A stretch of 63,808 nucleotides of DNA, counting the filler, from Octopus bimaculoides (taxonomy: Eukaryota), in NCBI RefSeq assembly GCF_001194135.2. It is 7 parts of 7 records of this genome, joined end to end, with 100 filler letters (N's around TTAATTAATTAA, not from the genome) between each part and the next. Parts side by side here need not be neighbours in the genome. Positions count along the whole stretch, not along the records: positions 6,499 to 29,900 come from NC_069005.1; 6 more parts are not named here. One strand, given 5' to 3'. Under the pieces are notes generated by a model, which was not told the DNA's origin, searched no databases, and worked only from the letters and a program-made list of their open reading frames with translations. How positions within the stretch are numbered: position 1 is the first letter of the stretch; each line of letters begins with the position of its first letter. A program made the translations under genes and the position numbers. Positions 13,060 through 13,805 of the stretch are shown one piece after another.

Positions 13060-13805
13060 TTAAAACATATATCAAATAAGCAGCCGATAACACAAGCCTG
13101 CCCTGGATGAACATGTAGAGACAAATCTAAATGTCCTCTAGGGTAGAAATGCAATACATCCTCTGTTGTTTATGAAGCATAGGTCTCAGCAAACTATGAC
13201 AATGGTAGAACAGAAATCAAACGTTATATTGGGTCTGTTGAAGGAAAATTTAAATCCCAATATAACAACCATCTTTCGAATTTTAGACACTGTGATAAAA
13301 CACACACAATAACTCTTTTGGCTTTAATCTGGCAACTTTAAGATGAAGAGACCAACTATGACACCAAATGCAAAATCCTTTTGAAAACCAGACCATATAT
13401 TAATGAATGAAAATGATGTTCTATATGTTCTCTCCAGAAACTAAATTTATTAAAGAACTTAAGGACCTTCGATGATTATGTAAATTCCAGAATGAGATAT
13501 TTTCATTATATCCGCATTTTAGGAAATACATCTAGGGCAGATTTAAAAACAGGCCACAGGACACATCGCATATATCTTTGTTTACATTTTTTCAACATTA
13601 TCTAGTGTAATGTTGGTTATTTCCCCTGTGTTTTCTTTCCATCTTTTTCCATATGAGCATTCTTTGTTTTAAATGTCATCTGCTTTAAAGCAATTGTCAA
13701 ACTGTCTTGTTTCCAGCTTGAAAAATGGTGGTGAAATAAATGTTTCAGCCATGAAACCCTGGGTAGCTGTAATTAACACAACTTGTGGTTTTAAGTATGA
13801 TATTT
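13060..13805 (+). mobile_element. Penelope-like element 3' fragment (CxC linker, GIY-YIG endonuclease relic, 3' terminal region)
   Basis: Reads *TCRDKSKCPLG*KCNTSSVVYEA...KRYIGSVEGKFKSQYNNH...IWQLKD...CSIC with several stops. Ends at (TA)n. Confidence 0.85.
13714..13769 (+). ncRNA. Candidate non-canonical type I hammerhead ribozyme (U3-A8 core)
   Basis: CAGC | TTGAAAA | ATGG..TGAAAT-AAAT-GTTTCA..CCAT | GAA | ACCC-T-GGGT | A | GCTG. Predicted cleavage after GUA (13765). Confidence 0.65.

What the first reader, a model, noticed from the sequence alone, without database searches (positions are those of the whole stretch)
13714..13769. Non-canonical hammerhead ribozyme family (UUGAAAA core) in Penelope-like element 3' ends
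Seen: complete type I topology in the sense strand of the PLE, about 40 nt before its (TA)n end. Stem I is CAGC/GCTG, core UUGAAAA, a long stem II closed by A-U, GAAA, palindromic stem III ACCC-U-GGGU, and a GUA site. A diverged PLE at 38658-38721 (-) has the same core with compensatory changes (stem I AGC/GCU to GGC/GCC; stem III ACCC/GGGU to ACCA/UGGU), while the upstream flanks show little similarity. Established: the canonical core is CUGANGA..GAAA..UH; C3-G8 is a tertiary pair that can covary to U3-A8; PLE terminal repeats carry type I hammerheads whose palindromic stem III favours dimeric cleavage. Inference: an active or recently active variant family that CUGANGA-based searches would miss. 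I cannot tell whether it has been described.
Basis: partly seen in the sequence, partly recalled or inferred. Interest (0 to 1): 0.82.

Follow-up and report, generated by a model that had tools for sequence, protein, structure and literature searches.

The report
Relic hammerhead motif in dead retrotransposon
The sequence is a real hammerhead-ribozyme motif in the tail of a dead, truncated Penelope-like retrotransposon, and its unusual core (U3-A8 instead of C3-G8) is a variant published in 2011 and 2014, so the finding is correct but ordinary.

Summary
The motif is in the sequence exactly as described at 13714-13769 (+): CAGC | UUGAAAA | 28-nt stem II | GAA | ACCCUGGGU | A | GCUG. My descriptor finds it once in the 23-kb piece, against 0.003 expected per shuffle.

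It lies about 180 nt after a decayed GIY-YIG endonuclease remnant and 36 nt before a (TA)n end. The remnant matches the 'Hydra' clade of Penelope-like elements (PLEs).

Intact Hydra-clade relatives carry a canonical CUGANGA hammerhead in the same place, with the same architecture: a long stem II, a 9-10-nt palindromic helix III and a GUA site. The two other tails recovered from this subfamily (L001, L003) also have T3 and A8, so the swap is a subfamily trait. Both are otherwise broken hammerheads, and no compensatory change was seen.

Natural U3-A8 covariation was reported by Perreault et al. 2011. Cervera & De la Peña 2014 found it in PLE hammerheads, with about 1,300 hits in Schistosoma mansoni.

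The copy here is 5'-truncated, carries six in-frame stops and has no partner motif nearby. 'Active or recently active' is not supported.

Verdict: observation confirmed, interpretation partly supported, a new member of a known kind, low interest.

The parts
13078..13533 (+). Decayed C-terminal GIY-YIG endonuclease remnant of a 5'-truncated Hydra-clade Penelope-like element. It has six in-frame stops. The homology boundary to L003 is at about 13061.
   Evidence: Frame translation shows (C)TCRDKSKC, VVYEA, YIGSVEGKFK and CSIC. tblastn with the L007 RT-EN ORF matches 13114-13428 at E=1e-14. An HMMER search with the 52-aa stop-free core found short relatives. The features match the Hydra-clade description (PMC8557442).
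13534..13713 (+). 3' untranslated region between the ORF end and the hammerhead.
   Evidence: Alignable to the tails of L001 and L003 at about 59-61% identity.
13714..13717 (+). Hammerhead stem I, 5' strand (CAGC).
   Evidence: Pairs 4/4 with 13766-13769.
13718..13724 (+). Core positions 3-9, UUGAAAA (U3 and A8 in place of C3 and G8).
   Evidence: T3 and A8 are shared with L001 and L003. Relatives L007, L008, L009 and L063 have C3 and G8.
13725..13752 (+). Stem II hairpin: 5 bp closed by A-U, a GG bulge, 6 bp, and an AAAU loop.
   Evidence: Present in the MFE fold. Folds at -7.5 kcal/mol on its own.
13753..13755 (+). Core G12 A13 A14.
13756..13764 (+). Helix III strand ACCCUGGGU (A15.1 to U16.1), a near-perfect palindrome.
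   Evidence: 8 of 9 positions self-complementary. It forms the intermolecular helix in the cofold MFE.
13765..13765 (+). A17. The predicted scissile bond is between 13765 and 13766 (GUA site).
   Evidence: This follows from the hammerhead numbering convention.
13766..13769 (+). Stem I, 3' strand (GCUG).
13770..13805 (+). 36-nt 3' 'tail' between the hammerhead and the insertion junction.
   Evidence: A comparable 33-nt spacing to (TA)n occurs in L062. PLE 30-40-bp tails are described in PMC8557442 and PMC11167929.
13806..13816 (.). (TA)n microsatellite at the 3' junction, truncated by an assembly gap (N 13817-13829).
   Evidence: (TA)n is the preferred target of Hydra-clade PLEs.

Best explanation
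This is the hammerhead motif of the pseudo-LTR / 3' tail of a Hydra-clade Penelope-like retrotransposon. It is preserved in a dead, 5'-truncated insertion that landed in a (TA)n microsatellite. In the parent element the motif would have sat between tandem copies. Because helix III is a 9-nt palindrome that cannot close as a stable hairpin, two motifs would pair to form a double hammerhead and cut after A17. That would process multimeric or read-through element RNA. This subfamily carries the isosteric U3-A8 swap of the C3-G8 tertiary pair, inherited from its master copy. Shown: the anatomy, the position in the element, homology to canonical hammerheads in relatives, the shared T3/A8 state, and the thermodynamic preference for the dimer. 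Inferred: past catalytic activity and its role in the element's life cycle. At this locus the motif is a fossil.
For: The motif is intact and non-random, with 1 hit against 0.0033 expected. The endonuclease remnant upstream matches the Hydra-clade signature: no Cys inside GIY-YIG, a CxCX5C linker, CxxC, and a (TA)n target. The intact relative L007 has hammerhead 46-96 followed by a 727-aa RT-EN ORF. L008, L009 and L063 have hammerheads roughly 85-200 nt after the ORF stop. All have a long stem II, a 9-10-nt palindromic helix III and a GUA site. L009 even shares the A-U closure of stem II and the sequence GAAACCUUAGGUA, against GAAACCCUGGGUA here. Helix III sequences differ between relatives (ACCCUGGGU, ACCUUAGGU, ACAGAUCUGU, ACAAAUUUGU) but all stay palindromic. 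T3 and A8 occur in all three tails of this subfamily. L003 extends further 5' than the window copy, so they are separate insertions. The cofold MFE is a double hammerhead at -37.5 against -24.8 kcal/mol. U3-A8 variants are known to cleave in vitro and occur naturally (PMC3088659), including in PLEs (PMC4209133).
Against: Only three tails of the subfamily were obtained, and the other two are not functional hammerheads. Position 4 is A in L001 and C in L003. U16.1 is C in L003. Stems I and III are broken without compensation. The motif is barely more conserved than its flanks: 63-70% against 59-61% upstream. As a monomer the fold is unremarkable, with z=-0.42, and the MFE uses an alternative pairing. 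No Rfam hammerhead model matches, but the same models also miss the canonical relatives, so that negative says nothing. Stem II is AT-rich and weak compared with relatives (-7.5 against -13 to -19.5 kcal/mol). No cleavage data exist. PLE hammerheads cleave poorly in vitro, and hammerhead mutants did not affect insertion of an Anolis PLE in vitro.
Confidence: 0.82

Rival explanations
1. One reading: an active or recently active, previously unrecognised non-canonical hammerhead family that is still propagating with its PLE.
For: The window copy is a fully intact motif. T3/A8 is shared by three copies. CUGANGA-based descriptors and Rfam would miss it.
Against: The carrier copy is truncated and has six stops. 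All four subfamily copies found have broken ORFs and are 49-73% identical to the window copy. An exhaustive protein search found only short ORF fragments for this subfamily. There is no partner motif for dimerisation within 23 kb. The U3-A8 variant in PLEs is already published.
Confidence: 0.08
2. A non-functional relic. The subfamily's master had already lost hammerhead function. T3 and A8 are two neutral transitions that happen to restore a pair, and the element transposed without any ribozyme.
For: Both changes are transitions. Position 4 differs in all three copies (T, A, C). PLE clades without a canonical hammerhead proliferate well (PMC8557442). Hammerhead mutants do not affect PAc insertion in vitro.
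Against: Hitting exactly the two partners of one tertiary pair, in the isosteric direction, is unlikely by chance. The window copy keeps every other invariant nucleotide, 4/4 stem I pairs and 8/9 palindromic helix III positions, even though its ORF has decayed.
Confidence: 0.09
3. A chance resemblance to a hammerhead in AT-rich DNA.
For: The descriptor is short. In a gigabase genome a rate of about 1 per 7 Mb gives hundreds of chance hits (extrapolated).
Against: It lies at the homologous place, on the same strand and with the same architecture as the hammerheads of related PLEs. It also aligns to hammerhead-like remnants in L001 and L003.
Confidence: 0.01

Closest known systems
PLE 'min-hammerhead' ribozymes with U3-A8 core (Cercyon elements of Schistosoma mansoni; Cervera & De la Peña 2014, PMC4209133)
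   Same: Type I topology in the PLE terminal repeat. Short helix I (4 bp), long helix II, and a minimal palindromic helix III implying dimeric cleavage. U3-A8 in place of C3-G8.
   Different: A different PLE clade (Hydra, not Cercyon) and a different host. Stem II here closes with A-U rather than the G10.1-C11.1 they report as highly conserved. No clear unpaired nucleotide lies between A9 and 10.1.
Canonical hammerheads of Hydra-clade PLEs (Craig et al. 2021, PMC8557442; examples L007, L008, L009, L063 here)
   Same: The same position after the RT-EN ORF, the same strand, a long stem II, a 9-10-nt palindromic helix III, a GUA site, and a (TA)n target. L009 shares the A-U closure and a nearly identical 3' half.
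   Different: Those have CUGANGA. This subfamily has UUGANAA and a weaker, AT-rich stem II.
Natural U3-A8 hammerhead core variants (Perreault et al. 2011, PMC3088659)
   Same: The same isosteric covariation of the C3-G8 tertiary pair. Such variants were shown active in vitro.
   Different: Those examples are from other genomic contexts and were not described as PLE-associated or dimeric.
Small dimeric PLE hammerhead variants (Lünse, Weinberg & Breaker, RNA Biol 14:1499, PMC5785218)
   Same: From the title and my own knowledge: very short stem III, cleavage as dimers, association with PLEs.
   Different: The paper is not held in the library, so I could not check whether U3-A8 cores are tabulated there.

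Membership tests
Hammerhead ribozyme, type I | Three-helix junction in the order stem I 5' strand, core 3-9, hairpin II, G12A13A14, helix III, U16.1-H17, stem I 3' strand. | tested here: met
   Sequence. The descriptor hit is unique in the piece.
Hammerhead ribozyme, type I | Invariant core U4 G5 A6 A9 G12 A13 A14, an A15.1-U16.1 pair, and H17 not G. | tested here: met
   All are present in the window copy. They are not all present in L001 (A4) or L003 (C4, C16.1).
Hammerhead ribozyme, type I | Strict C3 and G8 (the CUGANGA box). | tested here: not met
   The window has U3 and A8. The published literature accepts U3-A8 as a natural isosteric covariant that remains active (PMC3088659; PMC4209133). 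The underlying requirement of a 3-8 Watson-Crick pair is therefore met.
Hammerhead ribozyme, type I | G10.1-C11.1 closing pair of stem II (highly conserved, not absolute). | tested here: not met
   The pair is A-U here. The canonical-core relative L009 also has A-U and L007 has G-U.
Hammerhead ribozyme, type I | Match to a curated Rfam hammerhead covariance model. | tested here: inconclusive
   No hit at E<=10. The canonical PLE hammerheads of L007, L008 and L009 are also missed.
Hammerhead ribozyme, type I | Site-specific Mg2+-dependent self-cleavage giving 2',3'-cyclic phosphate and 5'-OH ends. | not testable with these tools
   Needs in vitro transcription of the monomer and the tandem dimer.
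PLE dimeric min-hammerhead | Located in the pseudo-LTR / 3' tail of a PLE, on the sense strand. | tested here: met
   About 180 nt after the endonuclease remnant and 36 nt before the (TA)n end.
PLE dimeric min-hammerhead | Minimal palindromic helix III that favours a double hammerhead. | tested here: met
   8 of 9 positions are self-complementary. The dimer MFE is -37.5 against 2 x -12.4 kcal/mol, with an intermolecular helix III.
PLE dimeric min-hammerhead | Structure-preserving covariation among copies of the family. | tested here: inconclusive
   Across clade relatives the stems differ in sequence yet stay paired, but those relatives were picked with a pairing descriptor. Within the subfamily (3 tails) changes are not compensated.
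Hydra-clade Penelope-like element | C-terminal GIY-YIG endonuclease lacking the CCHH cysteines, with a CxCX5C linker and CxxC / CxH motifs. | tested here: met
   VVYEA...YIGSVEG has no Cys. (stop)TCRDKSKC corresponds to CTCRNKSKC in relative P0020. CSIC is present. The CxH motif has decayed. tblastn to the L007 endonuclease gives E=1e-14.
Hydra-clade Penelope-like element | Insertion into (TA)n. | tested here: met
   (TA)n at 13806-13816. The same is seen in L062 and L064.
Hydra-clade Penelope-like element | RT with the clade-specific DKT and RWK motifs. | not testable with these tools
   The RT is absent from this 5'-truncated copy.

The most novel reading that the evidence does not exclude
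A whole Hydra-clade PLE subfamily in this host lineage propagated with a U3-A8, A10.1-U11.1 hammerhead. That would be a natural experiment showing either that the swapped tertiary pair supports the ribozyme's in vivo role, or, given the variable position 4, that catalysis is dispensable for PLE retrotransposition.
Probability: 0.3. Interest if true: 0.35.

Novelty: new member of a known kind. Interest (0 to 1): 0.2.

Why it matters
It adds one more lineage, a Hydra-clade PLE subfamily in an unidentified AT-rich animal genome, to the known set of PLE hammerheads with the U3-A8 core swap. It also gives a practical reminder. Neither CUGANGA descriptors nor the Rfam hammerhead models detect PLE-type dimeric hammerheads, not even canonical ones. 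Annotation pipelines therefore under-count them. The finding opens no new mechanistic question.

Tried and rejected
- Rfam scans of the piece and of the 156-nt neighbourhood gave no hammerhead hit. A control scan showed that canonical relatives are missed too, so this negative is uninformative.
- A word-indexed protein search with the stop-masked endonuclease remnant found nothing. A profile of close relatives returned only 4 proteins.
- A concatenated six-frame probe of four copies, meant to catch spurious ORFs over the tails, found nothing.
- The exhaustive HMMER search was limited to a 52-aa stop-free piece. Its long hits were bacterial low-complexity proteins and were discarded after a Pfam check.
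- Viral contigs gave no protein relative. The 50 DNA-pattern matches were left unexamined. I took them for chance matches, because the 18-nt pattern is short and degenerate.
- Genome contigs gave no relative.
- An exact-ORF look-up to identify the host genome found nothing. A paper search for the SRA run prefix turned up one paper on an unrelated subject (Chinese herbal medicines), which I did not open. The host stays unidentified, and 'cephalopod' is unverified.
- MAFFT misaligned the hammerheads (A4). I parsed them by hand in a script instead of building a covariance model.
- L002, L010, L011 and L065 tails showed no convincing hammerhead. L062 and L064 keep only the 3' half.
- Lünse et al. 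2017 and the supplements of Craig et al. 2021 are not held.

Full report
**Observation**

They read CAGC / UUGAAAA / AUGGUGGUGAAAUAAAUGUUUCAGCCAU / GAA / ACCCUGGGU / A / GCUG. In hammerhead numbering this gives U3 U4 G5 A6 A7 A8 A9, then a stem II closed by A10.1-U11.1. G12 A13 A14 follow. Helix III runs from A15.1 to U16.1, and A17 is at 13765. Stem I has four base pairs.

I wrote a type I descriptor that accepts C3-G8 or U3-A8. It requires at least 4 bp in stems I and II and a short helix III. It finds exactly this site on both strands of 6499-29900. In 300 dinucleotide-preserving shuffles it found a mean of 0.0033 hits. The motif ends 36 nt before a (TA)n run at 13806-13816, which is cut by a 13-N assembly gap.

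**What carries it**

Frame 2 upstream holds a decayed open reading frame at about 13078-13533 with six in-frame stops. It reads ...(stop)TCRDKSKCPLG(stop)KC...VVYEA...YIGSVEGKFKSQYNNHLSNFRH...CSICSLQK.... Pfam does not recognise it.

An exhaustive HMMER search with the longest stop-free piece (52 aa) found a set of short relatives. Several are 149-170-aa proteins with the pattern CxC-x5-C ... VVY ... YIG.TEG.FK.RY.NH ... C.LC..EK ... CRH. The long hits in that search were bacterial low-complexity proteins and were discarded.

This pattern matches point by point the description of the 'Hydra' clade of PLEs in Craig et al. 2021. That clade has a C-terminal GIY-YIG endonuclease without the CCHH cysteines, a CxCX5C linker, and CxxC and CxH motifs. 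Nearly all families insert into (TA)n, hosts include Mollusca, and 'canonical HHRs were readily detected' (PMC8557442).

tblastn with an intact 727-aa RT-EN ORF from a metagenomic relative (L007) matches window 13114-13428 at E=1e-14. Homology to the related copy L003 stops at about 13061 in the window, but it continues into the RT-EN linker in L003. The window copy is therefore a 5'-truncated insertion.

**Relatives and the homologous motif**

Intact Hydra-clade elements recovered from metagenome and assembly contigs carry a canonical hammerhead at the same place and on the same strand.

- L007 has one at 46-96, just upstream of its ORF.
- L008 has one at 1253-1303.
- L009 has one at 1386-1438, 200 nt after the stop. 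The next tandem ORF begins about 150 nt further on.
- L063 has one at 4592-4643, plus an inverted copy.

Their cores are CUGAUGA, CUGAGGA and CUGAAGA. All have a long stem II (-13 to -19.5 kcal/mol) and a GUA site. Their helix III strands are ACAGAUCUGU, ACCUUAGGU and ACAAAUUUGU. These differ in sequence but are all palindromic over 9-10 nt. L009 shares the A-U closure of stem II, and its 3' half is nearly the same as the window's: GAAACCUUAGGUA against GAAACCCUGGGUA. The window motif is thus the homologue of the Hydra-clade PLE hammerhead, not a chance look-alike.

**The U3-A8 state**

Four other copies of the window's own subfamily were found, all in Logan assemblies of runs SRR11869390, SRR11869391 and SRR11869394: L001, L003 (identical to L004 and L005), L006 and L065. 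L001 and L003 contain the tail. Their cores are UAGAUAA and UCGACAA.

T3, G5, A6, A8 and A9 are shared by all three tails, while the more distant relatives have C3 and G8. The swap is therefore a trait inherited from the subfamily's master copy, not a private mutation of this locus.

L001 and L003 are not functional hammerheads. Position 4 is A in one and C in the other, and U16.1 is C in L003. Stem I pairs 2/4 and 3/4, and the helix III palindrome is lost. None of these changes is compensated. The motif is only slightly better conserved than its flanks: 63-70% identity against 59-61% upstream and 49-56% downstream. That is what neutral decay of dead copies would produce. With three tails I cannot test for structural selection within the subfamily.

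**How it most likely worked**

As a monomer the RNA is unremarkable, with an MFE of -14.6 kcal/mol and z=-0.42. The MFE uses an alternative pairing of CCAG with CUGG. The hammerhead fold of the 56-mer costs -10.8 against an MFE of -12.4 kcal/mol.

Two copies cofold at -37.5 kcal/mol. That structure is a double hammerhead, with an intermolecular ACCC.GGGU helix III and stem I formed in trans. This is the dimeric mode proposed for PLE min-hammerheads sitting in tandem pseudo-LTRs (PMC4209133; PMC6765202).

The biological role of PLE hammerheads is itself unsettled. They cleave poorly in vitro. PLE clades without them proliferate well. Catalytic mutants did not affect insertion of an Anolis PLE in vitro (PMC11167929).

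At this locus there is no partner motif within 23 kb and the element is dead. The motif here is a fossil.

**Comparison with what is known**

Perreault et al. [quoted passage not shown] They also noted that such variants had already been shown active in vitro (PMC3088659).

Cervera & De la Peña 2014 found the same U3-A8 covariation in PLE (Cercyon) min-hammerheads. A dedicated descriptor retrieved about 1,300 hits in S. mansoni (PMC4209133).

What may be new is its occurrence in a Hydra-clade subfamily, for which Craig et al. reported canonical cores. I could not read their supplementary files or Lünse et al. 2017.

It also understates the problem, because the Rfam hammerhead models miss even the canonical Hydra-clade hammerheads.

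**Verdict**

The hammerhead identity, the PLE context, the U3-A8 logic and the dimer hypothesis hold. 'Undescribed' and 'active or recently active' do not. It is a new member of a known kind, and interest is low.

Noticed in passing
window 19909-21290 (+): A second decayed Hydra-clade-like PLE. An RT remnant at 19909-20265 matches L007 ORF residues 331-448 (E=7e-11). A linker-like ORF at 20497-20775 and an endonuclease-like ORF at 21074-21289 follow. No convincing hammerhead lies downstream; there is only an AUGAUGAG string near 21893.
   Followed up: partly
window 13831-14302: A roughly 470-bp foldback or MITE-like element lies directly after the assembly gap that follows the PLE's (TA)n end. 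It has long terminal inverted repeats (arms 13860-13966 and 14152-14258, 94% complementary) with nested 23-nt hairpins.
   Followed up: partly
window 6528-8182 and 9110-9418 (+): Fragments of non-LTR (LINE-type) reverse transcriptases, for example YLDFAKAFDKVDH and FIDMEKAFDRV. They are interrupted by a 733-N gap at 8285-9017. They are unrelated to the PLE.
   Followed up: no
window 14620-14684, 17908-17981, 27424-27494, 28795-28859, 29692-29836: Sub-threshold Rfam 'miRNA' matches (mir-297, mir-3149, mir-466, mir-1277). All fall on (TG)n, (TA)n or (TATG)n microsatellites and lie far below the gathering scores, so they are artefacts of simple repeats.
   Followed up: no
window 13817-13829, 8285-9017, 9570-9579, 9763-9772, 27008-27428: Assembly gaps (runs of N). 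The 13-N gap sits exactly at the PLE's 3' (TA)n junction, so the true length of the microsatellite and the junction are unresolved.
   Followed up: no
L063 4592-4643 (+), with an inverted copy about 3858-3909 on the - strand: Two hammerheads in opposite orientation flank an endonuclease ORF. This matches the 'inverted 5'-truncated copy' arrangement described for PLEs. The inverted copy differs by one C-to-U change in helix III that keeps a G-U pair.
   Followed up: no
L062 about 4560-4660; L064 about 740-790: These Hydra-clade tails keep only the 3' half of the hammerhead (GAAACAGAACUGUAGC and GAAACCUGGGUCGGUG), followed by (TA)n. The 5' core box is unrecognisable.
   Followed up: no
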